Positions 4,435 to 64,000 of a stretch of 64,000 nt of DNA are shown piece by piece. The translations under genes were made by a program, and so were the position numbers. Within the stretch, counting starts at the first letter, position 1; every line of letters starts with the position of its first letter. The notes under the pieces were generated by a model. That model did no database searches. It was not told where the DNA came from and saw nothing but the letters and a program-made list of their open reading frames with translations. This DNA is from Obrimoposthia wandeli (Eukaryota): assembly GCA_977020255.1 (NCBI GenBank), contig CDROCS010000122.1:248001-312000 (forward strand), read 5' to 3'.

Positions 4435-4635
4435 CTATTACTCCTTCCGTTTGGCACACTGCAAACTATACTTATTAGTATCAGCATTTATTAGTGTCAA
4501 CGTTTATCAGTGCCAAACTCTTCACAAGTATAGCCAGAAATTTAGACTCTACTCATTTCCCTATCCTTAGGAATACTGTTCAATAATACGCCAATCATAC
4601 TTATAATGTTGCTTTTCAATTCAAATTTTTAAACG

Positions 4636-4662
4636 AAAAAAACCGCAACAAATGCGGTTTTT
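4636..4662. terminator. Probable intrinsic terminator downstream of bolA
   Basis: AAAAAAACCGCA-ACAAA-TGCGGTTTTT stem with A/T tracts. Confidence 0.7.
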
Positions 4663-4725
4663 ATATTGAATAAATAGTAACAGTCACGATCTACTACCCT
4701 AAAGAGGTATTTGTTCGTGTTTCGA

Positions 4726-5034
4726 TTATTTAGAACCACCTTGGCATGAAGGTGATAATGGCGCACCATTTGAGAGCTCTTGCCATTCACTGAGCGTATA
4801 AGTATGAATAGCTAAGGCATGTATATCATTGGCTAACTCATGCGCGAGGGCTGAATTCACCGCGCGATGGCGGCCAATTAAACGTGTTCCTTCAAATTGC
4901 TCACTCACCACTATCACTTTAAAGTGGCTTTCAGAGCCTTCAGGTACGTTGTGCATGTAACTTTCATTTATGACTTCTAAATGAGCAGGTGAAAGTGCTT
5001 TTTGTAACTTTTCTTGAATGCGTTCCTGAATCAT
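4726..5034 (-). CDS. bolA: BolA family regulator
   Basis: [38 protein letters not shown]. Confidence 0.95.
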
Positions 5035-49633: not shown

Positions 49634-49858
49634 TTACACAGATTCAAAGCGTATTGTGATTCGCGATTTTGACTTTAATTCATTGCAAAAATTACAAAAA
49701 TAACTGGCTGAACCGCACGCTTGAAGCTTTTCCATTTCATGTTCACAGTCAGGGCAAAAAACATGCTTTTTGACTGTGTGTTGGCAAAAATCACAATAAT
49801 ACCCATCGTCTTTCCAGCTCAATTCGCTCTGACAATCGGGGCAAACATTATCACTCAT
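49634..49858 (-). CDS. yfgJ: Zinc-ribbon protein, YfgJ family
   Basis: CPDC..CDFC..CPDC..LQACG..YFCNFCNELKSK. Confidence 0.9.
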   Translation of the reverse strand: MSDNVCPDCQSELSWKDDGYYCDFCQHTVKKHVFCPDCEHEMEKLQACGSASYFCNFCNELKSKSRITIRFESV

Positions 49859-50102
49859 AACCTTCCCTTTCTTTCAAACCATCTTCCCACATGATGAGCG
49901 ATCATATAATCAAGCACAAACAAAATTATTGAGCCTAGATCAATCCTTTGATCCAACGCATAAATAGGCTTTATCTCGATCACGTTCGCATAAAAAACAA
50001 ATAAGAAAACCAGTCTATATAACCGGTTTCATTGTTCCGCTATTGTTTTTGTGTCCATTATACCAATAACATTCTGTTTAATGATCTAAAGGTAGGCTTG
50101 CT

Positions 50103-51539
50103 ATGTCGACAAACAAAATCAGCTCAGCGTTTCCTGATAACTTTTTATGGGGGGCTGCATCTGCCGCTTATCAAGTGGAAGGTGCCCATAACGCAGATGG
50201 AAAAGGTCCTTCCATTTGGGATAATTTCTCTCACCAACCAGGCACTACTTACGAAGGGACAAATGGCGACGTAGCAGCAGATCACTACCATAGATTTAAA
50301 GAAGATGTGGCATTAATGGCCGAGATGGGCATGCAAAGTTACCGGTTTTCAATCAGTTGGCCTCGCCTATTTCCCAACGGTCATGGAGCGATCAATAAAG
50401 CGGGGGTTAAATTTTATAGTGATTTAATTGATGAATTAATTATGCATGGCATTAAGCCCATGATCACCCTGTATCACTGGGATTTACCGCAAGCATTACA
50501 AGATATTGGTGGCTGGGAATCACGTGAAACCGTAGAAGCATTCGAACAGTATGCGGCGTTATGTTATCAAGAATTTGGTGATCGCGTTTCACTATGGTCG
50601 ACCTTCAACGAAGCATTAATTTTTATCGGTATGGGTTATTTTACAGGGGCTCACCCTCCAGGCTTAAGCGATCCTAAACGCGGTATTCAAGCTTGCCACC
50701 ATGTTTTTGTCGCGCATGCTAAAGCAGTAAAAACGTTCCGTGAATACCAACAGCAACAACGCGTACCACAAGACGGACAAATCGGCTTTGTTAATGTCAT
50801 GCAACCGCATGATCCCATCACAGACAAACCAGAAGATATTGCCGCATGTAAAATGGCGGATGATCTGCTAACACACTGGCTTTACGATCCTGTATTAAAA
50901 GGTGAGTACCCTGCGCACATTCTTAATATTACCCAGCTAACATGGGGGGTGCCTGTATTTTCACCTGGAGATGATGATTTACTTAAAAACAACATCTGTG
51001 ATTTCATTGGGGTGAATTACTACAAGCGAGAATGGATTGCAGCCAATCCAGATATTAGTAATACCAAAATAAATACAACAGGTAATAAGGGTTCCGGACA
51101 AGAGTTTGGTATTAAAGGTCTATTTAAGTTTGTTCATAATCCTCAATCTACCTATACCGATTGGGATTGGGAGATTTACCCTGAAGGCTTATCTGTTGGC
51201 ATGCTGCGATTAAAAGAGCGATACGGTGATATTCCGTTCTACATAACTGAAAATGGTTTAGGTGCAAAAGACCCGATCATTGATGGAGAAATCGTTGACC
51301 AACCTCGTATTGATTACCTATCAAGCCACATTGATGCTGCTGAATCGGCGATTAAGCAAGGGATTGATCTTCGTGGATACTACCCATGGTCTTTCATTGA
51401 CTTACTGAGTTGGTTAAACGGTTATCAAAAACAGTATGGTTTTGTATACGTCGATCGCGAGAATAATTTGCAGCGAAAACGTAAGAAGTCTTTTTTCTGG
51501 TATCAGGAAGTGATTGAATCAAATGGTGCTAAGCGTTAA
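50103..51539 (+). CDS. GH1 family (6-phospho-)beta-glucosidase, GmuD-like
   Basis: FLWGAASAAYQVEG, TFNE and ITENG catalytic motifs, WSFIDLLSWLNGY. Confidence 0.92.
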   Translation: MSTNKISSAFPDNFLWGAASAAYQVEGAHNADGKGPSIWDNFSHQPGTTYEGTNGDVAADHYHRFKEDVALMAEMGMQSYRFSISWPRLFPNGHGAINKAGVKFYSDLIDELIMHGIKPMITLYHWDLPQALQDIGGWESRETVEAFEQYAALCYQEFGDRVSLWSTFNEALIFIGMGYFTGAHPPGLSDPKRGIQACHHVFVAHAKAVKTFREYQQQQRVPQDGQIGFVNVMQPHDPITDKPEDIAACKMADDLLTHWLYDPVLKGEYPAHILNITQLTWGVPVFSPGDDDLLKNNICDFIGVNYYKREWIAANPDISNTKINTTGNKGSGQEFGIKGLFKFVHNPQSTYTDWDWEIYPEGLSVGMLRLKERYGDIPFYITENGLGAKDPIIDGEIVDQPRIDYLSSHIDAAESAIKQGIDLRGYYPWSFIDLLSWLNGYQKQYGFVYVDRENNLQRKRKKSFFWYQEVIESNGAKR

Positions 51540-51939
51540 CCGCCTTGATCAGGCGTAAGCCAGCAATTGCCCGACTTCGTTCGGGCGTTTCAAAAGCCAC
51601 GGCAAACGCCGTGTACCAAACAATTAATGCCTTAGATTATAAACCAAGCAGGCTTTACAGCTAATAGATAAGCAAGAGATCAGCACTATTGCTCCATTTT
51701 CAGGCAACGTGATCGTTCGTGAATCAGTTGATCATTTATGAAAAGGATTGTGATCAGCGATCTGGTGCTAAAAGAACATTTATGAATACACATCCCGAAA
51801 GCATAAGTTACATGTTCTGTATATGGACTTCACACAGAATAAAGCACTACTCAGTGGTCATTTAAGTGAAAGATCTAGATGTAAGTATATATAAGATCAA
51901 CTCTCATCTCTCGTTAATTGTCACTCTATTCATCCGCGT

Positions 51940-52503
51940 TTTTACGCTCAATAACAAATAAGGATTAAGTGTCGCGCCTTATATCAATGTAACCAGTGTC
52001 ACCATCAAGCTTCATTGATATCAGGCACTCTTTTTACCCATTCTAAACTGCCTTTAACTTTCTGCTTTATAGCCATTTATCTAATAACACAAGAAAAGAA
52101 TGGCAGCTCGGTGTCTCATACAACACGGCTCGGCGAGTGAAAAAAAGCTCATTTATGCCCTAAATCACTGGTTATATCTGATGGCCTTGCTTGTTTTCGT
52201 GGTGTTGAGGATGCAGAAAGTTTTCACCATTTAATAGTAACCGGCGGGGGTGCTGATTGTGTAGAGTTGCCGTATTTTAAATGGGTTAAAACAATGATCG
52301 GTAACGTAAAAAACGCAATACATGGAACATATCATTCAATCAACAAAAAGCACCTGCCGCGCTATCTGGCAGAGTTCTGTTTTAAGTTTAATAGGTGTTT
52401 TAATTTAGAGAAGATGCTTGAACAGTTAATATTTTCAAGTATTCAAACGGCACCGATGCCTCAACGTCTCCTCAAGTTAGCTGAGGCTCGATGGTAATCA
52501 AGT
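51940..52503 (+). mobile_element. IS1595-family transposase relic with internal deletion
   Basis: LYQCNQCHHQASLISGTLFTHSKLPL (Zn ribbon) and SDGLACF..WVKTMIGNVK..GTYH..KHLPRYLAEF..FNR..AEARW; catalytic core missing; GTAATCAAG end. Confidence 0.85.
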
Positions 52504-52851
52504 AAGACTATAGCCTTCACCGATATCATATATTAGCTTCATAATTCAACCTCAGACAATCATGCCTAAAATATATATAATGCACTGTTTAATAAGTGCT
52601 TTGGTGCATTTATCCGATTCAAATCAGAGTTCCAATTGATTACTAAAGACAAAAATCGCTTATTAATAACAAAGCAGTCAGTTAATTGCATTTATTGATA
52701 TACCTCGCAATATAAATAGTTTGCCATGTTTAATTGTAAATATTATTTTATTATTCTAGCCGAAAAATAAATGCTCAAATATTTGTTTCTAAATGACAAT
52801 TCACATTAATCATTAATTTAAAATAAACATAACAACAAAGAGTGAACGAAT

Positions 52852-53109
52852 ATGATCAATAAAATAGCTACCATAATCTCGCAAATTAAAAACAATTCTT
52901 CACTCGCCGAATCTATTACTTTAGATTGCCATCTTATCGAAGATGTCGGTTTAGATTCTCTTGATATCATTGATTTCTTATTAGAACTTGAAGCAACTTT
53001 TGAATTACAGTTTGATTTTGATGAACTTGATTTTTCTATCATGCAAAGCATGCGTTTATTGATTGAATTTATCCAAGAACAACAAGCACGCAGTATAGAA
53101 ACATGTTAA
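52852..53109 (+). CDS. Acyl carrier protein
   Basis: 85 aa, acidic, DVGLDSLDIIDF phosphopantetheine-Ser motif, LEATFEL. Confidence 0.9.
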   Translation: MINKIATIISQIKNNSSLAESITLDCHLIEDVGLDSLDIIDFLLELEATFELQFDFDELDFSIMQSMRLLIEFIQEQQARSIETC

Positions 53110-54374
53110 CTAGCACAGCATGGGCTTGCTTTAATGCCGAGCCTCTCTGGAATGACTCCCGTCTTGCATCTCTTCCCGCATTTGCTAACGAAGTTCAGGA
53201 TAGGCAAGTTCACTTTTTTGATGAAGTACAAGTACCGCATCATTCACAAGAAAGTGTTCTCTGTTTAATCGCTCCTGACCCAGCTTTAACGCGTTACCAT
53301 GAAAGCCTTGATCTCGACATTAAACGCCAGGCATTCTTTGCGGAATTTTCTGCTTGGCAGCAAGCAGGCGAACCTACTTGGCGTGACAGCGACAGCCTTC
53401 AGAATAGACTCTTGAATGCTATTAAAAACGGCCAGCAGGCACCTTTTGCTTGTGTCCCTAGCGCTTATGAAAATTCTTTTGATGCCTCTCACCTACCTAG
53501 CTACAACAACGTAGTCAAGGTCAATGATAAACGCTACGCAGTTGACTCATGTCAGCTGCTCAATATCAAAAATTATGGTACGAACCTCTCTTCCATAAAT
53601 TGCATCAACTCACTGAAAAAATTACAATTACCGATAATTTTAAAAGAGCCTTTTGGTGTTTCAGGTAAAGGTAGCCTCGTCATAAAACACACAACCGTTT
53701 TGAGCCGGATTTGCCAGCACTTTGAAAAACAAAGCTTAAAAGGTAAACAAATTGGCCTAGTGGTTGAACCTTTCCTTGATAAAGAATTGGACTTTTCAAG
53801 TCAGTGGGAAATAAAACAAGACGGGAATGTTTCATTACTGAATATCTCAGAGATCATCAATGATAAACTCAAGTTTTCAGGGGTTAAACCTGCGTCAAAA
53901 CGCCTTCTTGGATTATTAAACAATCATTCCTATATCGAACAAATGACAACCTTACTTGAAACCGTTTACAAAGATGGTTACTGGGGGCCGGTGTGCATTG
54001 ATTCGATGTCACTCAAAGATGGGTCTTTAGTTCCAGTTGTAGAGATCAATGCTAGAGAATCTATGGGGGCTATTGCTCAACGTTGGTTCGCTATATTCGG
54101 CACTCCAGAGTCCATTTTGTTTCATCAGTATTCCGTAAAGTACTCTCAACCTATTGATATTTCTGTTTTACTTGAACAATTAGAACAACGGGGTTGTTTA
54201 TACACTAAAAATCGATCTGCAGGTTATGTATTACTTAATAGCCGCTGCCTACAGATCCCTTCAGAACAACCTCAAATAGGCCGCCTGTACCTATTGCACA
54301 TTGGTAATAATGAAGTAGAAAGTAAAAAACGCCTTGAGCTTGTTTTATCGCAACAAGGATCATGCATTCTATGA
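53103..54374 (+). CDS. ATP-grasp ligase (Pgm1/BtrJ-like)
   Basis: ILKEPFGVSGKG, VVEPFL, DFSSQW, GYWGPVCIDSM, VVEINAR. Confidence 0.8.
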   Translation: MLTSTAWACFNAEPLWNDSRLASLPAFANEVQDRQVHFFDEVQVPHHSQESVLCLIAPDPALTRYHESLDLDIKRQAFFAEFSAWQQAGEPTWRDSDSLQNRLLNAIKNGQQAPFACVPSAYENSFDASHLPSYNNVVKVNDKRYAVDSCQLLNIKNYGTNLSSINCINSLKKLQLPIILKEPFGVSGKGSLVIKHTTVLSRICQHFEKQSLKGKQIGLVVEPFLDKELDFSSQWEIKQDGNVSLLNISEIINDKLKFSGVKPASKRLLGLLNNHSYIEQMTTLLETVYKDGYWGPVCIDSMSLKDGSLVPVVEINARESMGAIAQRWFAIFGTPESILFHQYSVKYSQPIDISVLLEQLEQRGCLYTKNRSAGYVLLNSRCLQIPSEQPQIGRLYLLHIGNNEVESKKRLELVLSQQGSCIL

Positions 54375-55441
54375 GTGCTTCAGTTGCGATCTTAACTTCC
54401 AGCAGTGGACTAGGCAGCTTTGTTCCGGCGGTCACTTTATCCAAATTATTGCAAAAACAAGGTTTCAAGGTGACCTTTCATGCTATTGAGCAATTGTATT
54501 CAGCCCAAGCTCTTGAGCGATTTTTAAGAACTCAAGCTCAATGTCAAAAAAACCTTCGTATCGCTATGCTTACCCAAAAATGGTTAGAACAAACCCCTCA
54601 ATCCATTAATGACGCTATTGATACAATCAAATTGGCAGCATTAGTCAGACAGTGGCAAAACAATAATACAAAAAAATTCATTCTCTTTAGTGGCTTTTGG
54701 ACTTCTTTATTAAATGAGGCCTCCTTACTCCCTGATACTGAGATAGAAGCGATGCACCTTGATGTCGGCCTGTCGTTATCTTGGAAAAATAGCCCCAAAT
54801 TAAAGATTAAACATAATTGGTTATTATCCTCATCCTCTTTGCAGCACTTAGTACCGCCTACACCTAACATCGTTTGGCAGCAGCGTTTACCTAGAGTTGC
54901 TTTGCATGGCGGGGGATGGGATATCGGTAATATTGACCAATATATCCCTCAGTTACGGCAGCATTTCACCTTATTGATTAACGACTCTTCTCTGCCTGAC
55001 CCTGCTCATACTGACCATCGATTAATCTCTGATCCAAGTTGGTTGCCGTGGCAGCAAGGTTGTACAAACAATGGGCAATTTCCACCTCAATATTTACGTG
55101 TTAATAACCACACCATTGAAGGAAAAAATGCAGCCGAATCTTTCTTCCAACAACAACTTTCCAACTGTTTGGCATTAGTAACAAAACCTGGAGGCGCGAG
55201 TTTAATCGACAGCTTCGCAACCTCGACACCACTGGTTCTTCTGCCGCCATTTGGTGACTACGAAAAAGAAAATGGGACAAGTTGGATAGAACAGGGATTT
55301 GCTCTCTCTTTTGAAGATTGGCAAGCACAAGGGTTTTCTCTGGATGCATTAGAGAAGTGTCATCATAAACTCTTACACGCTAGCACACACCGACAAGTTT
55401 ATGGAGAATGTTATGCAAACCAATACCTCACTAAAGCTTGA
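54371..55441 (+). CDS. GT-B fold glycosyltransferase-like protein
   Basis: ATGA overlap with the upstream stop; SSGLGSFVPA N-terminal loop, HGGGW, LVTKPGGASLIDS..PLVL..GDYEKEN donor-binding-like region. Confidence 0.65.
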   Translation: MSASVAILTSSSGLGSFVPAVTLSKLLQKQGFKVTFHAIEQLYSAQALERFLRTQAQCQKNLRIAMLTQKWLEQTPQSINDAIDTIKLAALVRQWQNNNTKKFILFSGFWTSLLNEASLLPDTEIEAMHLDVGLSLSWKNSPKLKIKHNWLLSSSSLQHLVPPTPNIVWQQRLPRVALHGGGWDIGNIDQYIPQLRQHFTLLINDSSLPDPAHTDHRLISDPSWLPWQQGCTNNGQFPPQYLRVNNHTIEGKNAAESFFQQQLSNCLALVTKPGGASLIDSFATSTPLVLLPPFGDYEKENGTSWIEQGFALSFEDWQAQGFSLDALEKCHHKLLHASTHRQVYGECYANQYLTKA

Positions 55442-56636
55442 TGAAAATGGTTTTTCACGCCTAAAAGAACGAGCAAAACAGATAGCGTCAACACGCCGTG
55501 GACTTCAACAACGCCCTGATTGGGCTGCAGATTTACCACAGCAAGTCGGTATAAAAATGAACAATCATTGTAACCTTCGTTGTAAGCATTGTTTTGAGTG
55601 GAATGAAGAGGGCTATCACCACCAGCTTGGTAATAGTGAACGTGGTAATGAAATTCCGCTTGCTATGGTAGAGAAATTACTCAAAGCCACAGAGTCAACC
55701 CAAGCCCCTTTCTATTTATGGGGCGGTGAACCTTTAATGTATAAAAACATGCAAGGTTTAATGGATCTGTTCGAGCAATATCCAAGATGGATAACCATTT
55801 GTACCAACGGCCTACTTATTGAAAAGCATTTAGAGCAGTTAATGAGGGTAGATCAACAGCTTGCCTTATTAGTGAGCCTCGACGGCCTAGAAGAAGATAA
55901 TGATGCTATTCGTGGAAAAGGCGTATTTAAGCGCGTTGAGGCCTCGATTAAGAAGATCCTAGCACTCAGGAAAGCGAACCAATTTTCTGGGAAAATCTCT
56001 CTTTGCTTAACCATCAACGATAGTACTGTTGGTAAGCTTTACGACTTTGTTCAGTATTTTTCGGATCTCGGTATTGATAGTGTTTACATGGTATTCCCTT
56101 GGTATATACCAAAAAATGTCGCTATGCAAATGAATGACTGGGTAAAGAAAGAGCTGCCATGGAAACAAGCTAAGCTTGATGCCTCGAATGTGAACACAAT
56201 AACAACTCACGCAGCTACACCAAGAAAAAAACCTGATAACGAATACAGCTGGCACGGTTATACCTACCACTTATCACCTGAAAACATTCCCGCTTTACTC
56301 GACGACATTGCAAGAATTGGTAAAGAAACTTGGAGATGCCGGGTACGCTTTCATCCAAACCTAGAACCTCATGAAGTGGAAGGTTTCGTTAAAGGCAGCA
56401 CCAAGCCTGCTGAAAATAAAACCTTTTGCACGGCCATCCGTAATCGTTTAGATGTTCTGCCAAATGGAGATGTCTCAAGTTGTAAGTTTTTCCCCGAGCT
56501 TGAAGTCGGCAATCTACAGCTTATTCCCCTTAAAGATATTTGGCATGGACGCGCCTACCAAGCGTTTCGTAAACAGCTCAATTGTGGACTGATGCCAGTA
56601 TGCTCTAAATGCACTCTGCTCTACAGTACAGGTTAA
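55413..56636 (+). CDS. Radical SAM enzyme 1 with twitch/SPASM-type C-terminus
   Basis: CNLRCKHC, WGGEP, TNG, SLDG; C-x17-C..CSKC; GGAG RBS before ATG 55413. Confidence 0.92.
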   Translation: MQTNTSLKLDENGFSRLKERAKQIASTRRGLQQRPDWAADLPQQVGIKMNNHCNLRCKHCFEWNEEGYHHQLGNSERGNEIPLAMVEKLLKATESTQAPFYLWGGEPLMYKNMQGLMDLFEQYPRWITICTNGLLIEKHLEQLMRVDQQLALLVSLDGLEEDNDAIRGKGVFKRVEASIKKILALRKANQFSGKISLCLTINDSTVGKLYDFVQYFSDLGIDSVYMVFPWYIPKNVAMQMNDWVKKELPWKQAKLDASNVNTITTHAATPRKKPDNEYSWHGYTYHLSPENIPALLDDIARIGKETWRCRVRFHPNLEPHEVEGFVKGSTKPAENKTFCTAIRNRLDVLPNGDVSSCKFFPELEVGNLQLIPLKDIWHGRAYQAFRKQLNCGLMPVCSKCTLLYSTG

Positions 56637-56648
56637 ATAGGAAATCTC

Positions 56649-57737
56649 ATGTCAATCACTAATATTCTACAAAACAAACTCCCTATCTGGGTCACCCTGC
56701 AACTCACTGATGCCTGTAATCTTCGCTGTAAAATGTGTTACGAGTGGGGTGAAAATGGCTCTTACCATGGCCGGAAACTGTCTCGCCTTGATAAAGACGT
56801 CGCTTTTCGTGTGATCGATGAGTGTTTACCCGTTAAACCCTATTTTGCCTTATTCGGTGGCGAACCCATGATGTATCCATGGTTTGAAGACATTGTTGGC
56901 CGTATTCGTCATGGTGGCTCACGAGTTGATGTCCCAACCAACGGCACATTTTTAAAGCGCAAAGCCGAATCACTGGTAGAAACCCCACCAAACCGACTTT
57001 GGGTATCATTAGATGGGCCAGAAGAAATCAATGATGCTCAGCGTGGAGAAAACGTCTATAAAAAAGTTCAAGAAGGGGTGGAAACACTATTTGAACTCAG
57101 AGAAACCAAAGGGTTAAAAGAACCAAAAATTGGTTACACTTTCATTGTAACACCGCATACCCACCTCTACATTCAAGGGTTCTTTGAGAAATGTTTAAAC
57201 CTCGACATGGTGGATCACATCAGTATCGAGTTCCAAACTTTTGCAACCGAACAAGAGCATGAGAAACATCTCCGATTATTTAAACGATTATTTGGCGTTC
57301 AAGAGACCCCTTGTGCTGCAGGGATGATCGATGATGTGCGTAAGTTTGAAATGATGGATTATTCTGCAATTGAGTCCCAAATAAGCTGGGTTCAAAAAGA
57401 GTGTATAAAACGAGATATCTACTTCGTTTGCTACCCTAAAACTATTGCTCACGACAACTACAAAGCGTATTTCAACAAACAATACCAAAATCTCATCGAC
57501 AAACGAGATAACTGTTTTTTCCCTTGGATTTATATGGAAGTAGCCTCCAATGGTGACGTCACACCATGCCATACCTTCTACGATGTACCACTAGGTAATG
57601 TGAATAACAGCAGCGTACCAGAGATCTGGAACGGCAGTGTTATGAAAAACTTCCGTCGCCAGCTTCGTAATGAAGGTGGGTTATTCCCTATCTGCGGTTC
57701 ATGCGCCCGTTACTACGCTGATCCAAACAAACGATAA
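56649..57737 (+). CDS. Radical SAM enzyme 2 with twitch/SPASM-type C-terminus
   Basis: CNLRCKMC, FGGEP, TNG, SLDG; C-x17-C..CGSC. Confidence 0.92.
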   Translation: MSITNILQNKLPIWVTLQLTDACNLRCKMCYEWGENGSYHGRKLSRLDKDVAFRVIDECLPVKPYFALFGGEPMMYPWFEDIVGRIRHGGSRVDVPTNGTFLKRKAESLVETPPNRLWVSLDGPEEINDAQRGENVYKKVQEGVETLFELRETKGLKEPKIGYTFIVTPHTHLYIQGFFEKCLNLDMVDHISIEFQTFATEQEHEKHLRLFKRLFGVQETPCAAGMIDDVRKFEMMDYSAIESQISWVQKECIKRDIYFVCYPKTIAHDNYKAYFNKQYQNLIDKRDNCFFPWIYMEVASNGDVTPCHTFYDVPLGNVNNSSVPEIWNGSVMKNFRRQLRNEGGLFPICGSCARYYADPNKR

Positions 57738-57763
57738 TAGAGCTGTGATAAAGGATAGATAAG

Positions 57764-58768
57764 ATGAGCTATATTTCCGTTAAAAACCTTAGCAAGGAAT
57801 TTCCTTACTACCGCAAACAGTCTGGCCTTAAAGCTTCACTGAAAAACTTATGGTCTCGTGAACTGCATTCTAAACAAGTGGTCAACTCTGTATCTTTTGA
57901 TGTTGAACAAGGCGAAATCGTCGCTTTTATTGGCCCCAATGGCGCAGGTAAAACCACCACTATGAAGATGCTTTCGGGCATTCTTCACCCCTCGTCGGGA
58001 GAAGCAACCGTCATGGGGTATACACCTTGGGAGAGGAAAAAAGCATTTAAAATGCGATTTTCGATTGTTATGGGACAGAAGCAGCAGTTGTGGCCTGACC
58101 TACCTGCAATTGATAGCTTTGAACTCAATAAACGTATTTATGAAATTGATGACAATAGCTTTAAACAGGTACTCGGTGAGCTCAGCGAGATCCTTAATGT
58201 ACGTCACTTGCTCGACATTCAAGTTCGCCGCTTATCCCTTGGTGAACGGATGAAAATGGAATTGATCGCGGCTATGCTGCATCAGCCCGATGTGATTTTT
58301 TTAGATGAACCCACTTTAGGGCTCGATTTCCTCTCACAGAGAGCGATTTTGGCCTTCCTGAAAACACTGTCGCAAGAGAAAAAAACCACTATGTTACTCA
58401 CCAGCCATAACATGGTGGATATTTCAACCTTATGTAATCGTGCTTTAGTGATAGAGAGCGGTGGCCTAGTGTACAACGGGGAATTAAGTGATCTAAATAG
58501 CGTTGTGGGCGCCAAGCGTCATCTTCATATTCATACTCATACGCCTGTCATTCCGGCTGATTTTTCTTCTTTTGGTCACATTGTGCAATTCAGTAGCAAT
58601 GAAATTGTTTTAGAGGTGACTAAACAGGAGTCCAATGCCGTCTTATCTCGCATATTGAATCAGGTGGATGTGGCTGATATCAATATAAAAGAAGCACCAT
58701 TAGAAGAAAGTTTAGAACGTCTCTATAGCAATTTGAAGGATCATAACAGCTTGAAGGTGCTTGCATGA
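57764..58768 (+). CDS. ABC exporter ATP-binding subunit
   Basis: GPNGAGKTT, LSLGERM, IFLDEPT, LTSH. Confidence 0.93.
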   Translation: MSYISVKNLSKEFPYYRKQSGLKASLKNLWSRELHSKQVVNSVSFDVEQGEIVAFIGPNGAGKTTTMKMLSGILHPSSGEATVMGYTPWERKKAFKMRFSIVMGQKQQLWPDLPAIDSFELNKRIYEIDDNSFKQVLGELSEILNVRHLLDIQVRRLSLGERMKMELIAAMLHQPDVIFLDEPTLGLDFLSQRAILAFLKTLSQEKKTTMLLTSHNMVDISTLCNRALVIESGGLVYNGELSDLNSVVGAKRHLHIHTHTPVIPADFSSFGHIVQFSSNEIVLEVTKQESNAVLSRILNQVDVADINIKEAPLEESLERLYSNLKDHNSLKVLA

Positions 58769-59565
58769 GCAAGTACTTATTTATCATAAAAATGGGGTTA
58801 CAGATGTCCCTTACTTATCGGCTCAATTATGTCATAAGTTTGCTTTCTTCTGCCTTCCCAATTTTACTCCAAGTGATGCTGTGGCATGCCATATTCACTT
58901 ACACTGGGGCGGAAAAAGTGTATGGCTACTCATATTCAGAAATGATGGCCTACACCTTATTTGCTTCTCTCATTGGGCAGGCATTGCGGACTGGATTTGA
59001 ATATGAAGTCGCTAAAGATATTAAGGAAGGTGGATTAAACCGCTTTCTTATTCAACCTTTATCTTATCTAGGTTATCGCTTTTCCGCTTATGTGGGCACC
59101 AATATGAGTTATTTTATTGCCACATTAATTCTGCTTGGGTTATGCGGCCTTTTATTGGTCCATTTACTCGATATTTTCTTCACCTTAAAATCTTATTTAT
59201 TGCTGATCATCGTGCTTCTTGCCGCATTTATGATCCAGTTCTTTCTTTTTTATATGATCGGGTTAGTGGCTTTTTGGGCACAGGAAGTCTGGGGGGTATT
59301 TGAATCTGTCCGTATTGTTGGCCTTGTTCTCTCTGGTGGTATTTTTCCATTAACCGTATTTGGGGAGCTAGGAATGGAAATATTAAGTTATTTGCCATTC
59401 CAGTACGTAATTTTCTTCCCTATTGAAGTGGTGTTAGGACGTGCAAGCGATTCCGACATTTTTACTGGCTTTTCCATTCAACTGTTTTGGATTGGGTTAC
59501 TTTGGTTCTTGTCACGTTTAGTTTGGCAGCGTGGTTGTAAAAGCTTTATTGCATTAGGAGGCTAA
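58765..59565 (+). CDS. ABC-2 type permease (DUF990-like) 1
   Basis: Six hydrophobic segments; EVAKDIKEGGL..FLIQP, LSGGIFPL, LPFQY..FP. Confidence 0.85.
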   Translation: MSKYLFIIKMGLQMSLTYRLNYVISLLSSAFPILLQVMLWHAIFTYTGAEKVYGYSYSEMMAYTLFASLIGQALRTGFEYEVAKDIKEGGLNRFLIQPLSYLGYRFSAYVGTNMSYFIATLILLGLCGLLLVHLLDIFFTLKSYLLLIIVLLAAFMIQFFLFYMIGLVAFWAQEVWGVFESVRIVGLVLSGGIFPLTVFGELGMEILSYLPFQYVIFFPIEVVLGRASDSDIFTGFSIQLFWIGLLWFLSRLVWQRGCKSFIALGG

Positions 59566-59567
59566 CC

Positions 59568-60383
59568 ATGATCAATGAAATGTGGTGTGAGCTGGTGAAA
59601 CATGCTCGTATTTACGGATTTTTACTTAAAATAAACGCCATGCGTCAATTAGAGTACCGGCTTAATATTGCGCTAAACATCATGGTGGAAATGGGGTATT
59701 TAGGGGTTAAATTGATTTACGCCTACATCATTCATGATACAGGGGTACACATTGCGGGGCTTTCTCCTGACAGCATCTACTTGTTCATTGGTACTTATAT
59801 GTTAATGACGGTTTTTTTCGTTAGCATGCTGCAATTCAATATCGTGGTGTTTGATCAACAGATCCGAGATGGCGATTTTGATTTGATCCTCACAAAACCT
59901 GTCTCTTCTCAATTTATGGCGACGCTGAAGCACGTAGATACATGGATTTCGATCCCAAACATTATCGTGGGGCTTGGCCTTATCGGCTACGGCTGGCACG
60001 CTTCCGAGGTTGCTTTTAGCATCACCAATATTGTGGGATTTACCAGCTTTATTGCTTTGGGTATTGTCACCATGTATGGCCTGTTTGTACTACCTCTTTT
60101 ATTGGCCTTCAAGTTTAAAAACATCTCCGCGCTACAGAGTTTTTATTGGGCTATGTGGGATTTTAATAATCTGCCCCATAAAATCCACATTAGACCCGTT
60201 CAGCTGATGGGAGCCGTAGTATTCCCCTTGTTTTTGATCACTAACTGGTCGCCTCTGTTTGTGCTCGACCAACTATCAACACCAGAACTTATTTGGGGCA
60301 TCGTAGCGCCTGTCATTCTATTTTCGTTAACTCGTATTCTATGGAAAGTAGCCCTAAAACATTATGAAAGTGCCACCAGCTAA
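59568..60383 (+). CDS. ABC-2 type permease (DUF990-like) 2
   Basis: LEYRLN, IRDGDFDLILTKPVSSQF, hydrophobic, ends LKHYESATS. Confidence 0.85.
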   Translation: MINEMWCELVKHARIYGFLLKINAMRQLEYRLNIALNIMVEMGYLGVKLIYAYIIHDTGVHIAGLSPDSIYLFIGTYMLMTVFFVSMLQFNIVVFDQQIRDGDFDLILTKPVSSQFMATLKHVDTWISIPNIIVGLGLIGYGWHASEVAFSITNIVGFTSFIALGIVTMYGLFVLPLLLAFKFKNISALQSFYWAMWDFNNLPHKIHIRPVQLMGAVVFPLFLITNWSPLFVLDQLSTPELIWGIVAPVILFSLTRILWKVALKHYESATS

Positions 60384-60397
60384 AAAGGAGTATCACC

Positions 60398-61159
60398 TTG
60401 TTCGATTTATCAGAAAGAACCATTTTTATTACAGGTAGCTGCCGAGGCATTGGTTTGGCCATGGCAAAAGCCTTGCACAGCCAAGGAGCCAATGTTGCCA
60501 TTACTGCGCGCAATACTGAAAGCTACCCAAATATTTTACAGCACTTTCCAAGCGCACCAGACAACGTATTAGTTTTAGATTGTGACATTACTGATCCAGA
60601 TTCGATCGAAGCAGCAGTGCAGGCTACCGTCAACTGGAAAGGTGTGTTGCATGGTTGTATTGCCAATGCAGGTGAGCGTGGTGCTGGCATGAAAGTAACA
60701 GACATGCCTTATGATAGTTGGCAAGAAAGCTTGAATACCAACCTTAATGGTACGTTCCATACATTAAAAATCGTCGCAAAAAAAATGCAAACACAAGATC
60801 TGGGGGGGCGACTATTAGCGACTGCGAGCTTATCAAGTTTAAAAGGAACCGCAGGGTTTGCGGATTATGGTGCGAGCAAAGCGGCCATTAACTCCTTATG
60901 CCGCTCTTTAGCGGTAGAACTAGCGCCGAATAAGATCACTGTCAACTGTGTATTACCTGGCTGGGTCGAGACGGATATGAACAAAGATGTTGTCAATGAT
61001 AGAAGACAATACGAGTCTATCAAACGCCTTCGTATCCCTGCTGGACGCTGGGCGACTCCAGAAGACATTGCCCCTGTTGCTGTTTACTTAATGTCTGAAG
61101 AAAGCCGCTACCACACTGGCGATTCTCTAACCATTGATGGCGGATACGCAATCTTTTAA
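60398..61159 (+). CDS. Short-chain dehydrogenase/reductase
   Basis: TTG start with AAGGAG RBS; TGSCRGIG, NAG, YGASK, PGWVET. Confidence 0.93.
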   Translation: MFDLSERTIFITGSCRGIGLAMAKALHSQGANVAITARNTESYPNILQHFPSAPDNVLVLDCDITDPDSIEAAVQATVNWKGVLHGCIANAGERGAGMKVTDMPYDSWQESLNTNLNGTFHTLKIVAKKMQTQDLGGRLLATASLSSLKGTAGFADYGASKAAINSLCRSLAVELAPNKITVNCVLPGWVETDMNKDVVNDRRQYESIKRLRIPAGRWATPEDIAPVAVYLMSEESRYHTGDSLTIDGGYAIF

Positions 61160-61167
61160 GGTTATTT

Positions 61168-62292
61168 ATGAACACGATATATCCCGATTCACAGCCTACT
61201 CTTCTACAATCTAACCTTTTACAAACCAACCTCGACTTAATGAACCAATCCACATTTGAGTTTGATACAGCAAGGCTAGAATCGCCACCGAATTGCTTTG
61301 TATTTGGACTTTATACCTTGGGGGCGTTGAATGAAAATATCCCATCACTCGCCAGTGTGTTTTCTGAACATAGCTTCTCCTACTGGGATGATCACCACCA
61401 ACACCCTAACCTTATTGACCCAGATACTCTGTTCACTAAATTTGGCTTCTGTAGGCAGCAAAGCGAACCGTATTTAGATGTATATGCAGACCGAGTGGAA
61501 GGAAAAATGATAAACTTGCTCGCTGCTCGCTGTGGCATCGAAGCTGAAGTTATACCCTTTACAGACTTTAATAAATTGATGGCGTATTTTGGTCAGCAAA
61601 TGGCCCAGCAGCAACCCGTATTGTGCGACTTCGATATGGGTTACATTCCATCGCGACATCAGTATAAGATCATACGCGGTTATGAGCATGTAGTCTTTTT
61701 TACACAGTTTGATCAAAATACTCAGCAGCTTTTATTGTGCGATCAAGATGAACTAAAGGATCCCGTTCCACTCGCTGATGTAGAAGCATGCTTTGACTCT
61801 ATGCTGAAAATGAAAGGAACGTTCAATTGTTACCAAGCGAAAGCGACAATAAAGAAAAGTCAATTCCTCTCCCCAAGTGACATCCGAAACGATGTGAGAG
61901 CCAATGTAGATAATTTAACCACAACGAATCCAAAGCTAGGTATGCAAGCAATTAATCGCTATTTAGAGTCGATGAAACAAGTTAAGCCGCTCAATACCCC
62001 ATTTTATGTCTTTGGTCACTGGGTGTTTGCACTACAACGAAATATGCAAGTACGCTGGTGTGATTTAGCACTGCAATCACTGGATTCTCAGGCTCAAAAA
62101 ACCGCAGCCCAAGAATTAAAGCAGCACCTTTCCCTTGTGGCAAATAAATGGAATGAATTTACCATGCTTGATAAATTGAGCCGGAAGATCGATCGTGTTA
62201 CGCCAGCTCAGGTGGCGCAAAAATGTATTGATGCTGCAACATTGGAACTAGACAGTCCACGTTATTGGCTGGCATTACAAAAGGTGCTTTGA
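61168..62292 (+). CDS. BtrH-like protein (papain-like acyltransferase/hydrolase fold)
   Basis: N-terminal NCF; PVLCDFDMGYIP..Y....EHVVFF..FD....LLLCD resembles BtrH_N; helical C-terminus (GMQAI..QR..KW..E). Confidence 0.6.
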   Translation: MNTIYPDSQPTLLQSNLLQTNLDLMNQSTFEFDTARLESPPNCFVFGLYTLGALNENIPSLASVFSEHSFSYWDDHHQHPNLIDPDTLFTKFGFCRQQSEPYLDVYADRVEGKMINLLAARCGIEAEVIPFTDFNKLMAYFGQQMAQQQPVLCDFDMGYIPSRHQYKIIRGYEHVVFFTQFDQNTQQLLLCDQDELKDPVPLADVEACFDSMLKMKGTFNCYQAKATIKKSQFLSPSDIRNDVRANVDNLTTTNPKLGMQAINRYLESMKQVKPLNTPFYVFGHWVFALQRNMQVRWCDLALQSLDSQAQKTAAQELKQHLSLVANKWNEFTMLDKLSRKIDRVTPAQVAQKCIDAATLELDSPRYWLALQKVL

Positions 62293-62308
62293 TTAGCAAA
62301 ATGGTATC

Positions 62309-62355
62309 AATAGAAAGGGGAAAGAGGCGTACTCCTAACCTTTTCTATTTCTTTT
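62309..62355 (+). terminator. Possible terminator closing the 10-gene operon
   Basis: AATAGAAAGG..CCTTTTCTATT imperfect stem plus T-rich tail. Confidence 0.45.
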
Positions 62356-62456
62356 GAAATTACGGCGATTTCTCTTGAGTAAAGTCATTCATGCCTGGGT
62401 CAAGTTCAAACACTTTTGACACAGAAGTAGATACGCTGAATCACTCCCGAAGGGCC

Positions 62457-62583
62457 AGTTTTGTTGGAATCTATGCGGTGTTACTTATTTTCAACGTAGA
62501 ACAACTAGGTCTATAAATAAGTGTCTTGCCTAGAGCCCAACAAATTCTCGCTGAAACGAGCATCTTGAGGTAACTTGGGTATA
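62457..62583. repeat. 127-bp dispersed repeat (ERIC/MITE-like), copy 2
   Basis: Direct-orientation near-copy of 49473-49599; ends GCATCTTGAGGTAACTTGGGTATA. Confidence 0.9.
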
Positions 62584-62603
62584 AAGTTCTACTAAAAAAA
62601 TAA

Positions 62604-63479
62604 CTAGGGTTTTGTGTGGGTAACCATTACCAATTCTTGATCGCTAACGAGTTCAAACTGAACATATAGCGCACTGTATTCTGCAAGTGATTGTATGTGA
62701 GAGCCACCGCATGGGATTTCAATCATTTCCTTCTCCCCTAAATCACATTGCCAGTAACGTGAATCGGTTAACTGCGTACCTTCACGGCGCATCACTACCT
62801 CAGCACCACTCTGACGCCAAGTTTCTAACTGCTGGTTAATGAGTTCAGTTAACGCCACTAAATTAGCCAGCATATCTGCCGTATTTAGCCCACGTTTGCG
62901 TAATGTTTTACCTAACCGATAAGTATCAGTACTTTTATCTTCACTCACAATGCTCTGCTGCTGAGCGTAACTGTGAAAATCGTAATGCCCTAATTCATCT
63001 TTACGTGAGGCATCTTTACGCCAATAATCGCTATGTAACACTTTATTAAGTGCTAAAGAAGAAAGATGTCCTGCACTATGCCCACGGCTTAATGCCTGCT
63101 GATTAGCCTTATCAACCGACAAGATGACGGTATCTCCCCTGCTCCATTGAACGTCTTCAGCAATATAATGCACAACAACAAATGCCCAACCAGACACATC
63201 ACGCTTAACGGGAATGTCTGTGCCGACATAAAGCGTATTCGTTGCTAAATTAACAGCACCTGTAAAACAACCTGCCACATCAAAACATATTTCTCCCACA
63301 GTCATAGTGCCTTTATCTGCAGGGTGATCAGGCCAAATATGACTAACAGGATGAAAACAGGTGCGATCTGTCACTACATATACACCACGTGAAATGGCTG
63401 GTTCACATAGCTGAATTTCAGCTTCTGTTTGCCATTGTGGCACCGTAAATAGCACGTGGGTTGGTGTAACATCAGACAT
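62604..63479 (-). CDS. AlaX-like tRNA-editing domain protein
   Basis: RTCFHP, HSAGH and PCGGSH Zn-binding motifs. Confidence 0.85.
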   Translation of the reverse strand: MSDVTPTHVLFTVPQWQTEAEIQLCEPAISRGVYVVTDRTCFHPVSHIWPDHPADKGTMTVGEICFDVAGCFTGAVNLATNTLYVGTDIPVKRDVSGWAFVVVHYIAEDVQWSRGDTVILSVDKANQQALSRGHSAGHLSSLALNKVLHSDYWRKDASRKDELGHYDFHSYAQQQSIVSEDKSTDTYRLGKTLRKRGLNTADMLANLVALTELINQQLETWRQSGAEVVMRREGTQLTDSRYWQCDLGEKEMIEIPCGGSHIQSLAEYSALYVQFELVSDQELVMVTHTKP

Positions 63480-63626
63480 ATTTTGAACCTTTATTTATGA
63501 TGGTATCAATATCGACAAGTCTCAGGGCGCGACTTATCAAAAATAGTAAACACGACGGAAGCACAGATAAAAAAATACCCAACACAAGGCTGGGCATTTC
63601 TATTAATACGCTGTTAATAAGACAAG

Positions 63627-64000
63627 TTACTTACGGCGACCGTGAAGCACACCCGTCAAACGCTTACGTTGACGTTCTTGAGAAACAGTTAATTTCTGCT
63701 TCGTTGTTTCAAATGGGTTTTCACTATTCTGGAATTGAATACGAATTGGTGTACCCATCATTTCTAATGAACGACGGTAGTAGTTCATTAAGTAGCGCTT
63801 GTATGATGCTGGCAGATCATTAACCTGATTACCGTGAATAACGATAATTGGTGGGTTGTAGCCACCTGCGTGTGCATACTTTAACTTCACACGACGTCCA
63901 CGAACCATTGGTGGTTGGTGATCATCTTGAGCCATTTGCATAATACGTGTTAGAAGCGATGTACTAATACGCTTAGTTGCTGACTTATATGCTTCAATAA
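63627..64000 (-). CDS. der: Ribosome biogenesis GTPase Der, C-terminal KH domain (partial)
   Basis: [58 protein letters not shown]. Confidence 0.96.

What the first reader, a model, noticed from the sequence alone, without database searches (positions are those of the whole stretch)
52852..62292. Candidate novel biosynthetic system: 10-gene ACP / ATP-grasp / GT / twin radical SAM / ABC / SDR / BtrH-like operon
Seen: ten co-oriented genes with overlapping or 2-26 nt junctions and recognisable RBSs, all apparently intact, preceded by an AT-rich promoter region. There is no NRPS, PKS, KS, adenylation domain, aminotransferase, DOI synthase or visible precursor peptide. Known: ACP + ATP-grasp + BtrH is the logic of butirosin side-chain assembly (BtrI/BtrJ/BtrH), and twitch radical SAMs (BtrN) oxidise aminocyclitols or sugars. 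Inference: an NRPS-independent pathway making an exported, radical-tailored acyl/aminoacyl-glycoside, or decorating a host or environmental glycan. I know of no characterised pathway with this gene set in Vibrionaceae.
Basis: partly seen in the sequence, partly recalled or inferred. Interest (0 to 1): 0.9.

Follow-up and report, generated by a model that had tools for sequence, protein, structure and literature searches.

The report
Carrier-protein glyco-amino-acid biosynthetic island
A horizontally acquired ten-gene operon that probably builds and exports a sugar-bearing, radical-modified amino-acid compound on a small carrier protein without the usual giant peptide synthetases; its four-gene core recurs in hundreds of bacterial genomes, and I found no paper describing a product.

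Summary
Ten intact, co-oriented, tightly packed genes lie at 52852-62292: ACP, ATP-grasp, GT-B glycosyltransferase, two radical SAM enzymes, an ABC-2 exporter (ATPase plus two permeases), an SDR, and a BtrH-like protein.

The ATP-grasp model's best Swiss-Prot match is BtrJ (TM 0.76). The last gene's model matches the carrier-dependent transacylases CtaG, CcbD, BtrH and AsbE, and has a Cys43/His174/Asp192 triad. Both radical SAMs keep only a four-Cys, BtrN-like single auxiliary-cluster pattern.

New findings:
- The operon is an island. A related contig has the same flanking genes with an intact lacI-type regulator and no cluster. In the window an IS1595 remnant abuts the cluster.
- The same ten genes recur alone in Veronia and Photobacterium, so it is not a fragment of an NRPS/PKS cluster.
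- The core (ACP, ATP-grasp, GT, radical SAM, usually with the ABC-2 exporter) recurs among 571 genome hits across many phyla, mostly Paenibacillus. No homolog carries a functional name, and I found no paper on the cassette.

The product, the loaded substrate and expression remain unknown. Verdict: a new variant of the known NRPS-independent thiotemplated kind. Interest is moderately high.

The parts
51592..51953 (+). Two scraps of a LacI-family regulator gene, which is internally deleted; they lie beside the left edge of the island
   Evidence: blastn against the empty-site contig L091: window 51592-51654 and 51642-51953 match parts of the intact 330-aa LacI gene and its flank at 84% and 81%
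52015..52497 (+). Degenerate IS1595 (ISXO2-like) transposase remnant, broken into short ORFs
   Evidence: ORF 52267-52497 matches the last 39 positions of PF12762 DDE_Tnp_IS1595, E 1.7e-10. The upstream frames are fragmented
52500..52851 (+). AT-rich putative promoter/leader region with an RBS (AAAGAG) before the ACP start
   Evidence: GC 0.34-0.36; promoter-like site 52553-52581 at 10/12; sequence read. No conservation with relatives
52852..53109 (+). g1: acyl/peptidyl carrier protein with phosphopantetheine attachment site Ser36 (GLDSL)
   Evidence: PF00550 26.5 bits, above the 20.8 cutoff. Ser36 is invariant in 64/64 homologues
53103..54374 (+). g2: BtrJ-like ATP-grasp ligase, the putative loader of the carrier thiol
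   Evidence: No Pfam hit. AF2 model pLDDT 91. Best match is BtrJ Q4H4E7, TM 0.76, followed by BesA and LdmS; in PDB 8ynd, 7r8q, 8yi6, 3wvq. Profile hit to 8ynd, E 5e-10. Invariant K143, K181, E314-x-N316-x-R318
54362..55441 (+). g3: divergent GT-B (GT28/MGDG-synthase-like) glycosyltransferase
   Evidence: The family profile hits UgtP 9wde, E 1.4e-8, over the KPGGxTL...E..NA nucleotide-sugar motif. The nearest Atlas clusters are structurally MGDG_synth/Glyco_tran_28_C-like, TM 0.74. Co-located with the ATP-grasp in 72/72 loci with enough sequence
55401..56636 (+). g4: radical SAM enzyme of the type near-universal in the cassette, with a single-auxiliary-cluster (twitch-like) C-terminal domain
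   Evidence: PF04055 + PF13186. Invariant C57/C61/C64 plus C134, C343, C361, C401, C404 in 65 homologues. g4-like enzymes occur in 65 of the 67 loci that have a radical SAM
56649..57737 (+). g5: second radical SAM enzyme (25% identical to g4), twitch-like, the most conserved gene of the operon
   Evidence: PF04055 + PF13186. Invariant C23/C27/C30 plus C252, C289, C307, C349, C352. 91% identical to Veronia and 77% to Pseudoalteromonas. 256 homologues at E<=1e-20, all with generic names
57764..58768 (+). g6: ABC transporter ATPase (DrrA/NodI-like)
   Evidence: PF00005, 92 bits; TIGR01188 drrA subfamily, E 6.6e-56; Walker A at residue 57
58765..59565 (+). g7: ABC-2 permease (ABC2_membrane_6)
   Evidence: PF06182, E 3.3e-23
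59568..60383 (+). g8: second ABC-2 permease (ABC2_membrane_6)
   Evidence: PF06182, E 1.2e-28
60398..61159 (+). g9: classical SDR oxidoreductase (FabG/glucose-1-dehydrogenase-like)
   Evidence: PF13561, E 1e-59; TGxxxGIG at residue 12 and YxxxK at residue 157
61168..62292 (+). g10: CtaG/BtrH/CcbD-like papain-fold transacylase with a C-terminal helical domain
   Evidence: BtrH_N 27.7 bits, just below the cutoff. AF2 model pLDDT 92.5. Foldseek hits: AziU3, CtaG, CcbD (PDB); YobF, BtrH, AsbE (Swiss-Prot). C43 lies at a helix N-terminus. In the 33-sequence alignment A4, C43 and H174 are at least 90% conserved and D192 is below 90%. H174 and D192 are invariant in the 11-sequence alignment A2

Best explanation
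The stretch from about 51954 to 62600 is a horizontally acquired island. Its ten-gene operon most likely encodes an NRPS-independent, carrier-protein-templated pathway to an exported glycosylated, radical-tailored amino-acid (or short acyl) conjugate. The proposed steps are all inferred from fold and gene context; none is shown biochemically. (1) Holo-ACP g1 (Ser36-phosphopantetheine) is loaded by the BtrJ-like ATP-grasp g2 through an acyl-phosphate. By analogy with BtrJ, CtaD, BesA and LdmS, the loaded group is probably an acidic amino acid attached by a carboxyl group. (2) The GT28-like glycosyltransferase g3 adds a nucleotide-sugar-derived hexose, and the radical SAM g4 acts on the same intermediate. 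Both stay linked to the carrier and loader across phyla. The twitch-type radical SAMs g4 and g5 would carry out H-abstraction chemistry such as BtrN-like alcohol oxidation, epimerisation, decarboxylation or C-C coupling. The SDR g9 would carry out a keto-reduction or oxidation. (3) The CtaG/BtrH/CcbD-like transacylase g10 takes the acyl group onto Cys43 and passes it to an amine acceptor (an amino sugar, polyamine or second amino acid), or otherwise releases it. (4) The ABC-2 system g6-g8 exports the product or protects the producer.
For: Catalytic and cofactor residues are conserved: ACP Ser36 in 64/64 homologues, the radical SAM CxxxCxxC motif plus four auxiliary Cys, the ATP-grasp ExN/R motif, the transacylase Cys/His/Asp, and the SDR and Walker motifs. 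Gene-set recurrence: all ten genes occur in the same order in Veronia pacifica and Photobacterium sp. at 49-91% identity. Of the 571 relatives of the ATP-grasp, the best 80 loci were fetched and 72 had enough flanking sequence; there the ATP-grasp sits next to the GT in 72/72, a radical SAM in 63/72 and the ABC ATPase in 55/72. BtrH_N-like genes occur in 39/80 loci. A Betaproteobacteria variant replaces the ATP-grasp with an AMP-ligase and adds an NRPS C-A-T-TE module, a PPTase and an MFS pump, while keeping carrier-GT-radical SAM. This marks the cassette as thiotemplated secondary metabolism (the GT homologue is aligned). Accessory genes elsewhere are methyltransferases, an NDP-sugar epimerase/dehydratase, GFO_IDH_MocA, an aldo-keto reductase and a second carrier with an AMP-ligase. 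Island status comes from the empty site in L091 and the IS remnants. Published precedent for the ATP-grasp + carrier + papain-like transacylase logic: PMC7183216 and PMC12865890.
Against: No step has biochemical support. The substrate of the ATP-grasp is guessed from distant structural neighbours at 13-17% identity. There is no PLP decarboxylase (BtrK/CtaF), aminotransferase or deacetylase, so the amine acceptor is unidentified. No PPTase gene lies in the island. About half of the related loci lack a recognisable BtrH-like gene within the -5/+11 kb span examined. The GT's nearest solved relative acts on a lipid (diacylglycerol), which fits the envelope-decoration rival. Expression evidence is one 266-nt contig in one metatranscriptome, which may be DNA carry-over. 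Foldseek TM-scores for g10 are only 0.4-0.5.
Confidence: 0.55

Rival explanations
1. Envelope decoration. The GT28/UgtP-like enzyme makes or extends a membrane glycolipid or surface glycan. The ACP/ATP-grasp pair supplies an aminoacyl group in a Dlt-like way, and the transacylase puts it on the sugar. The ABC-2 system flips or exports the decorated lipid or glycan, as NodIJ or Wzm/Wzt do.
For: The GT family's only significant solved relative is the processive diacylglycerol beta-glucosyltransferase UgtP. A neighbouring Paenibacillus cassette has a bona fide MGDG_synth GT together with a BtrH_N protein, a radical SAM and the same ABC-2 set. In Alteromonadales the cassette is contiguous with GT2 genes, including an approximately 1150-aa GT2, a GH20 chitobiase and a second ABC-2 pair. 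The ATPase resembles NodI and DrrA.
Against: The Vibrionaceae island carries no polysaccharide synthase, flippase, polymerase or lipid-carrier genes. Variants with an NRPS module, PPTase, MFS pump and methyltransferases look like small-molecule clusters. The patchy, IS-associated distribution is typical of accessory metabolite clusters.
Confidence: 0.22
2. RiPP-like or protein-scaffold system. The two radical SAM/SPASM-type enzymes mature a ribosomal peptide or the carrier protein itself, and the BtrH/C39-like protein acts as a leader peptidase next to an ABC exporter.
For: The best sequence hits of g4 and g5 include the peptide maturases SkfB, PapB, CteB-like and PqqE-like. The papain/C39-like fold plus an ABC exporter is a bacteriocin motif.
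Against: No conserved small ORF or conserved DNA lies upstream or inside the operon. No PqqD/RRE domain is present in g4 or g5. Only 4-5 auxiliary Cys are conserved, not the 7-Cys SPASM pattern. The invariant Ppant serine and the BtrJ-like loader point to thioester chemistry. The exporter is ABC-2 type, not a PCAT.
Confidence: 0.06
3. Silent or decaying cargo. The island is intact in sequence but is not expressed, or cannot function in this host for lack of a cognate PPTase or acceptor, and yields no product.
For: It lies next to a degenerate IS and a deleted regulator gene. One Veronia strain has the second radical SAM gene split into two ORFs. No convincing RNA evidence exists.
Against: All ten reading frames are full-length, with every catalytic motif kept. 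Near-identical copies occur in several independent samples and species labels. The second radical SAM (g5) is strongly conserved: 91% identical to its Veronia counterpart.
Confidence: 0.12

Closest known systems
Butirosin side-chain pathway of Niallia circulans (BtrI ACP, BtrJ ATP-grasp, BtrH transacylase, BtrN twitch radical SAM)
   Same: A stand-alone carrier with a structurally BtrJ-like ATP-grasp (TM 0.76) and a BtrH-fold transacylase with a Cys/His/Asp triad. Radical SAMs with the BtrN-like Cx17C...CxxC single auxiliary-cluster pattern. A glycosyltransferase and an exporter sit in the same cluster.
   Different: There is no DOI synthase, aminotransferase, PLP decarboxylase (BtrK), monooxygenase (BtrO/V) or gamma-glutamyl cyclotransferase (BtrG). 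Sequence identity to BtrJ and BtrH is only 13-17%. The GT is GT28-like. The host is a Gram-negative member of the Vibrionaceae. It is not a 2-deoxystreptamine aminoglycoside cluster.
Closthioamide assembly (CtaD ATP-grasp, CtaE/CtaH carriers, CtaG papain-like ligase) and the 'NRPS-independent thiotemplated' clusters mined from it (PMC7183216, PMC12865890)
   Same: It uses the same three-part logic of ATP-grasp loader, carrier and papain-like transacylase. The g10 model hits the CtaG crystal structures and shares the bipartite papain-plus-helical architecture.
   Different: It has no decarboxylase, thioamide synthetase or second carrier. It adds a GT28-like GT, two twitch radical SAMs, an SDR and an ABC-2 exporter. 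The ATP-grasp family is so divergent that no Pfam ATP-grasp model detects it.
Lincosamide condensation enzyme CcbD/LmbD
   Same: It is a carrier-protein-dependent, cysteine-protease-like enzyme that acylates an amino sugar. It gives the best-fitting full-length PDB match together with AziU3 (TM about 0.5).
   Different: In lincosamide pathways the donor is loaded by an adenylation domain and the amino-octose is made by a dedicated pathway; neither is present here.
Nod-factor system (NodF ACP, NodA acyltransferase, NodC GT2, NodIJ ABC-2 exporter)
   Same: ACP-dependent acylation of a sugar scaffold followed by ABC-2 export. The ATPase shows NodI-like similarity. The Alteromonadales versions carry GT2 and GH20 genes.
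   Different: It has no NodA, NodB or NodC homologues and no ketosynthase. The resemblance is in logic only.

Membership tests
NRPS-independent thiotemplated ATP-grasp pathways (butirosin/closthioamide type) | Stand-alone carrier protein with a phosphopantetheinyl serine | tested here: met
   PF00550 above threshold; Ser36 in GLDSL invariant in 64/64 homologues
NRPS-independent thiotemplated ATP-grasp pathways (butirosin/closthioamide type) | ATP-grasp ligase of BtrJ/CtaD type encoded beside the carrier | tested here: met
   The gene overlaps the ACP gene by 7 nt. The AF2 model's best Swiss-Prot match is BtrJ, TM 0.76, E 2e-22. The ExNxR and Lys motifs are invariant. Similarity is structural only, at 17% identity
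NRPS-independent thiotemplated ATP-grasp pathways (butirosin/closthioamide type) | Papain-like transacylase with a Cys-His-Asp triad and a C-terminal helical domain (CtaG/BtrH/AsbE class, PMC12865890) | tested here: met
   Foldseek hits to CtaG, CcbD, AziU3, BtrH and AsbE. C43 and H174 are at least 90% conserved in A4. H174 and D192 are invariant in the 11-sequence alignment A2, while D192 is below 90% in A4. Residues 43-226 are papain-like and residues 236-373 are helical. The triad geometry was not measured
NRPS-independent thiotemplated ATP-grasp pathways (butirosin/closthioamide type) | PLP-dependent decarboxylase acting on the tethered amino acid (BtrK/CtaF; present in about 65% of mined clusters) | tested here: not met
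   None of the ten genes has a PLP-enzyme domain, and none is among the recurrent accessory genes
NRPS-independent thiotemplated ATP-grasp pathways (butirosin/closthioamide type) | ATP-dependent thioester loading of the carrier demonstrated | not testable with these tools
   Needs intact-protein MS of holo-g1 with g2, ATP and candidate acids
2-Deoxystreptamine aminoglycoside (butirosin) cluster | DOI synthase and aminotransferases for the aminocyclitol core | tested here: not met
   Absent from the island, whose limits are fixed by the empty-site comparison
Twitch-domain radical SAM enzymes (BtrN type) | CxxxCxxC radical SAM motif plus one auxiliary [4Fe-4S] cluster ligated by four Cys, not the seven-Cys SPASM motif | tested here: met
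   g4: C343, C361, C401, C404. g5: C289, C307, C349, C352. These are invariant, each with only one further conserved Cys. The cluster content itself cannot be tested here
RiPP radical SAM/SPASM maturase systems | Adjacent precursor peptide gene and an RRE/PqqD recognition domain | tested here: not met
   No conserved small ORF or conserved upstream DNA. No PqqD/RRE domain in g4 or g5
GT28/MGDG-synthase-like GT-B glycosyltransferases | C-terminal nucleotide-sugar-binding motif and GT-B fold | tested here: inconclusive
   The family profile hits UgtP at E 1.4e-8 over the KPGGxTL...E..NA motif. The nearest Atlas clusters have a GT-B, MGDG-synthase-like fold. Pfam gives no hit above threshold, and no model of g3 itself was made
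Anti-phage defence systems (PADLOC) | Match to a defence-system protein model beyond generic domains | tested here: not met
   Only generic radical SAM core (pVip) and ABC ATPase matches

The most novel reading that the evidence does not exclude
The conserved quartet of carrier, BtrJ-like ATP-grasp, GT28-like GT and twitch radical SAM defines a widespread, uncharacterised assembly logic. In it, glycosylation and radical SAM chemistry take place on an amino acid while it is thioester-tethered to a carrier protein, giving a new class of exported glyco-amino-acid metabolites. The Vibrionaceae island would be a compact, transferable ten-gene version of this system.
Probability: 0.3. Interest if true: 0.8.

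Novelty: new variant of a known kind. Interest (0 to 1): 0.62.

Why it matters
Carrier-templated pathways that work without NRPS or PKS enzymes have been described only recently (butirosin, closthioamide, petrobactin and lincosamide condensation). They may be under-detected by NRPS/PKS-centred genome-mining rules, though I could not run antiSMASH or similar tools to check. This operon is a compact, self-contained, apparently mobile example that adds a glycosyltransferase and two single-auxiliary-cluster radical SAM enzymes to that logic.

Its four-gene core is conserved among hundreds of genomes, from Paenibacillus to Nostoc, Clostridia and marine Gammaproteobacteria. No homologue carries a functional name and I found no paper on the cassette. 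Solving one member, and this 9.4-kb operon is a convenient one, would assign function to a large orphan cluster family. It could also reveal new radical SAM chemistry on carrier-bound or sugar substrates.

Tried and rejected
- **Sequence-only searches of g2, g3 and g10 against PDB:** nothing useful. Profiles and AF2 models were needed.
- **Literature:** seven full-text searches found no paper on this cassette. The source of PDB entry 8ynd was not found.
- **Names of homologues:** all generic, such as 'radical SAM protein' or 'hypothetical'.
- **Defence-system reading:** rejected. PADLOC gives only generic domain hits.
- **RiPP reading:** downgraded. There is no precursor ORF, no RRE and no 7-Cys SPASM motif.
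- **'Fragment of a larger NRPS/PKS cluster':** rejected for this locus. The empty-site comparison and the identical ten-gene unit in Veronia and Photobacterium, each with unrelated flanks, argue against it.
- **Expression test:** three RNA-seq runs of a related species label gave no reads, which is no test because the organism or island may be absent. One metatranscriptome gave a single 266-nt contig.
- **Exact-sequence look-up of g2:** found nothing, so the source organism was not identified.
- **Atlas search of g4:** only unnamed radical SAM clusters.

Full report
**Observation**

Their junctions are overlaps of 4-41 nt or gaps of 2-26 nt. All are full-length compared with their orthologues in Veronia pacifica.

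Pfam and NCBIfam give these assignments:
- **g1:** PP-binding, with 'acyl carrier protein' names.
- **g4 and g5:** Radical_SAM plus SPASM-type C-terminal domains.
- **g6:** an ABC ATPase of the DrrA/NodI type.
- **g7 and g8:** ABC2_membrane_6.
- **g9:** a classical SDR.
- **g10:** BtrH_N at 27.7 bits, just under the 29.7 threshold.
- **g2 and g3:** no Pfam match.

The region upstream (52500-52851) is AT-rich and contains the best promoter-like match in the area. That scan is not enriched over shuffles, so it is only suggestive.

**The two 'dark' enzymes and the BtrH-like protein**

*g2.* An alignment of 27 homologues (A1) shows invariant Lys residues and an E314-x-N316-x-R318 motif, as expected for an ATP-grasp Mg/ATP site. 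The profile hits the Streptomyces 'ATP-grasp peptide ligase' 8ynd (E 5e-10). The AF2 model (pLDDT 91) has BtrJ, the [butirosin ACP]-L-glutamate ligase, as its best Swiss-Prot match (TM 0.76 both ways, E 2e-22). BesA (gamma-glutamyl ligase) and LdmS (L-Asp-L-Met ligase) follow. In PDB the best matches are 8ynd, LdmS, BesA and PGM1.

*g3.* The family profile (A5) hits the processive diacylglycerol glucosyltransferase UgtP (E 1.4e-8) over the KPGGxTL...E..NA nucleotide-sugar motif. Its nearest Atlas clusters have an MGDG-synthase/GT28-like GT-B fold.

*g10.* The family is small and fast-evolving: four proteins by word search and 32 representatives by exhaustive HMMER. [quoted passage not shown]
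- In PDB it matches AziU3, the closthioamide ligase CtaG and the lincosamide condensation enzyme CcbD.
- In Swiss-Prot models it matches YobF, BtrH and the petrobactin enzyme AsbE.
- Cys43 sits at the N-terminus of a helix.
- Cys43 and His174 are conserved in at least 90% of the 33 aligned sequences, while Asp192 is below 90% there.
- His174 and Asp192 are invariant in the 11-sequence alignment A2.

This is the bipartite, Cys-His-Asp class of carrier-dependent transacylases described in PMC12865890 and PMC7183216.

**The radical SAM pair**

g4 and g5 are 25% identical. Across 95 homologues, each keeps the CxxxCxxC motif plus four invariant C-terminal Cys arranged Cx17C...CxxC, and one further conserved Cys. 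This is the single-auxiliary-cluster (twitch) pattern that I recall for BtrN, not the seven-Cys SPASM motif.

The g4 type is nearly universal in the cassette: 65 of the 67 loci that have a radical SAM. The g5 type is an add-on in 30 loci, yet it is the most conserved gene: 91% identical to Veronia and 77% to Pseudoalteromonas. Neither has a named relative. Their solved-structure hits mix peptide maturases (SkfB, CteB-like) with sugar-modifying enzymes (BtrN, BlsE, DesII).

**Recurrence as a unit**

A genome scan with the ATP-grasp profile found 571 relatives, and the 80 best loci were fetched.
- All ten genes, in the same order, occur in Veronia pacifica and Photobacterium sp. MCCC 1A19761. 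Enterovibrio nigricans has at least the ACP, the ATP-grasp and the BtrH-like gene.
- Among the 72 loci with enough flanking sequence, the GT follows the ATP-grasp in 72, a radical SAM in 63 and the ABC ATPase in 55.
- An ACP gene precedes the ATP-grasp in 62 of 78 loci by ORF clustering.
- Taxa include dozens of Paenibacillus species, Pseudoalteromonas, Paraglaciecola, Nostoc, Cyclobacteriaceae, Pedobacter, Clostridia, Methylococcaceae, Thiothrix, Acidobacteriota, Anaerolineales and Spirochaetales.
- BtrH_N-like genes of three divergent sub-families occur in 39 of 80 loci.
- Accessory genes include SAM- and FkbM-type methyltransferases, an NDP-sugar epimerase/dehydratase, GFO_IDH_MocA, an aldo-keto reductase, GT2, and an AMP-ligase with a second carrier.
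- In a Betaproteobacteria MAG the ATP-grasp is replaced by an AMP-ligase. The carrier-GT-radical SAM trio is interleaved with an NRPS C-A-T-TE module, a PPTase and an MFS pump.
- In Alteromonadales the cassette continues with GT2, a GH20 chitobiase, a BtrH-like gene and an approximately 1150-aa GT2.

The persistent linkage of carrier, loader, GT and g4-type radical SAM is the strongest clue that these four act on one intermediate.

**Island status**

A Logan contig (L091) encodes the identical 291-aa protein found at window 62604-63479. There it lies directly beside an intact LacI-type regulator and the GH1 gene, with no cluster.

The blastn comparison gives:

| Window | L091 (reverse complement) | Identity |
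|---|---|---|
| 49707-51550 | 1-1835 | 93% |
| 62601-64000 | 3375-4775 | 99.8% |

The regulator survives in the window only as two scraps. The stretch from about 51954 to 62600 is extra. It begins with a degenerate IS1595 transposase. The Veronia copy is flanked by an IS3 transposase and a Tn7 TnsA-like scrap. Near-identical copies occur in several samples and species labels.

The ten genes are therefore the whole transferable unit.

**Mechanism**

This section is inferred. The best-supported reading is a thiotemplated, NRPS-independent pathway:
1. The BtrJ-like ligase loads the carrier. The closest structural relatives all activate Glu or Asp carboxyls, so an acidic amino acid is my guess.
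2. The GT28-like enzyme, the two twitch radical SAMs and the SDR tailor the intermediate.
3. The CtaG/BtrH/CcbD-like enzyme transfers it through Cys43 to an amine or releases it.
4. The ABC-2 system exports it.

What is shown is fold, motifs and gene linkage. Substrate, order of steps, acceptor and product are inferred.

The main rival (about 0.2) is decoration of a membrane glycolipid or surface glycan. It is favoured by the UgtP-like GT, by the ABC-2 exporter, and by the GT2 and GH20 neighbours in Alteromonadales. A RiPP reading is weak: there is no precursor, no RRE and no SPASM Cys set. A defence reading is excluded.

Expression is untested in practice. One 266-nt contig inside g5 in a metatranscriptome is all that was found.

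**Comparison and novelty**

The operon works like the butirosin side-chain module and the closthioamide backbone module. It meets three of that kind's features by structure and motif: carrier, BtrJ-type ATP-grasp and papain-like transacylase. It lacks the PLP decarboxylase and everything specific to aminoglycosides. It adds a GT28-like GT, two twitch radical SAMs, an SDR and an unusual two-permease ABC-2 exporter.

I found no paper or named homologue for the cassette. I could not run antiSMASH or MIBiG comparison, so 'uncharacterised' rests on those searches only.

I rate it a new variant of a known kind. It is interesting mainly as the compact, mobile representative of a large orphan cluster family, and as a likely source of new radical SAM chemistry.

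Noticed in passing
window 51545-51953, compared with L091:5900-6892: A LacI-family regulator next to the GH1 beta-glucosidase gene is intact in a related contig. In the window it is reduced to two scraps, with about 740 bp of internal sequence missing, beside the island. The GH1 gene may therefore have lost its repressor.
   Followed up: partly
window 49707-51550 vs 62601-64000: The two flanks of the island differ sharply in identity to the same related contig: 93% on the left and 99.8% on the right. This suggests a recombination boundary at the island.
   Followed up: no
window 62604-63479 (- strand): A 291-aa protein between the island and der has no Pfam hit. It is native, not island cargo: it is identical in the cluster-free contig L091.
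   Followed up: partly
L085:8701-9827 (Veronia pacifica CAIM 1920) vs L084:13508-14635: The orthologue of the second radical SAM gene is split into 238-aa and 137-aa ORFs in one Veronia assembly and whole (375 aa) in another. This is either decay or a sequencing error.
   Followed up: no
L083:1-9006 and L083:9729-17139 (Paenibacillus pseudetheri): Two related cassettes sit back to back. One is BtrH_N, a 75-aa ORF, a radical SAM, an MGDG_synth GT and ABC-2; the other is ACP, ATP-grasp, GT, radical SAM, GFO_IDH and ABC-2. A two-component system follows. Several Paenibacillus genomes carry two loci.
   Followed up: partly
L086:5234-18628 (Betaproteobacteria MAG): A variant of the cassette in which a single NRPS module (C-A-T-TE) is inserted between the two radical SAM genes, and a PPTase and an AMP-ligase replace the ATP-grasp.
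   Followed up: partly
window 55401 vs 55413: The longest ORF of g4 starts at 55401 and overlaps g3 by 41 nt. Homologues are about 390 aa, so the true start is probably 55413 or later.
   Followed up: no
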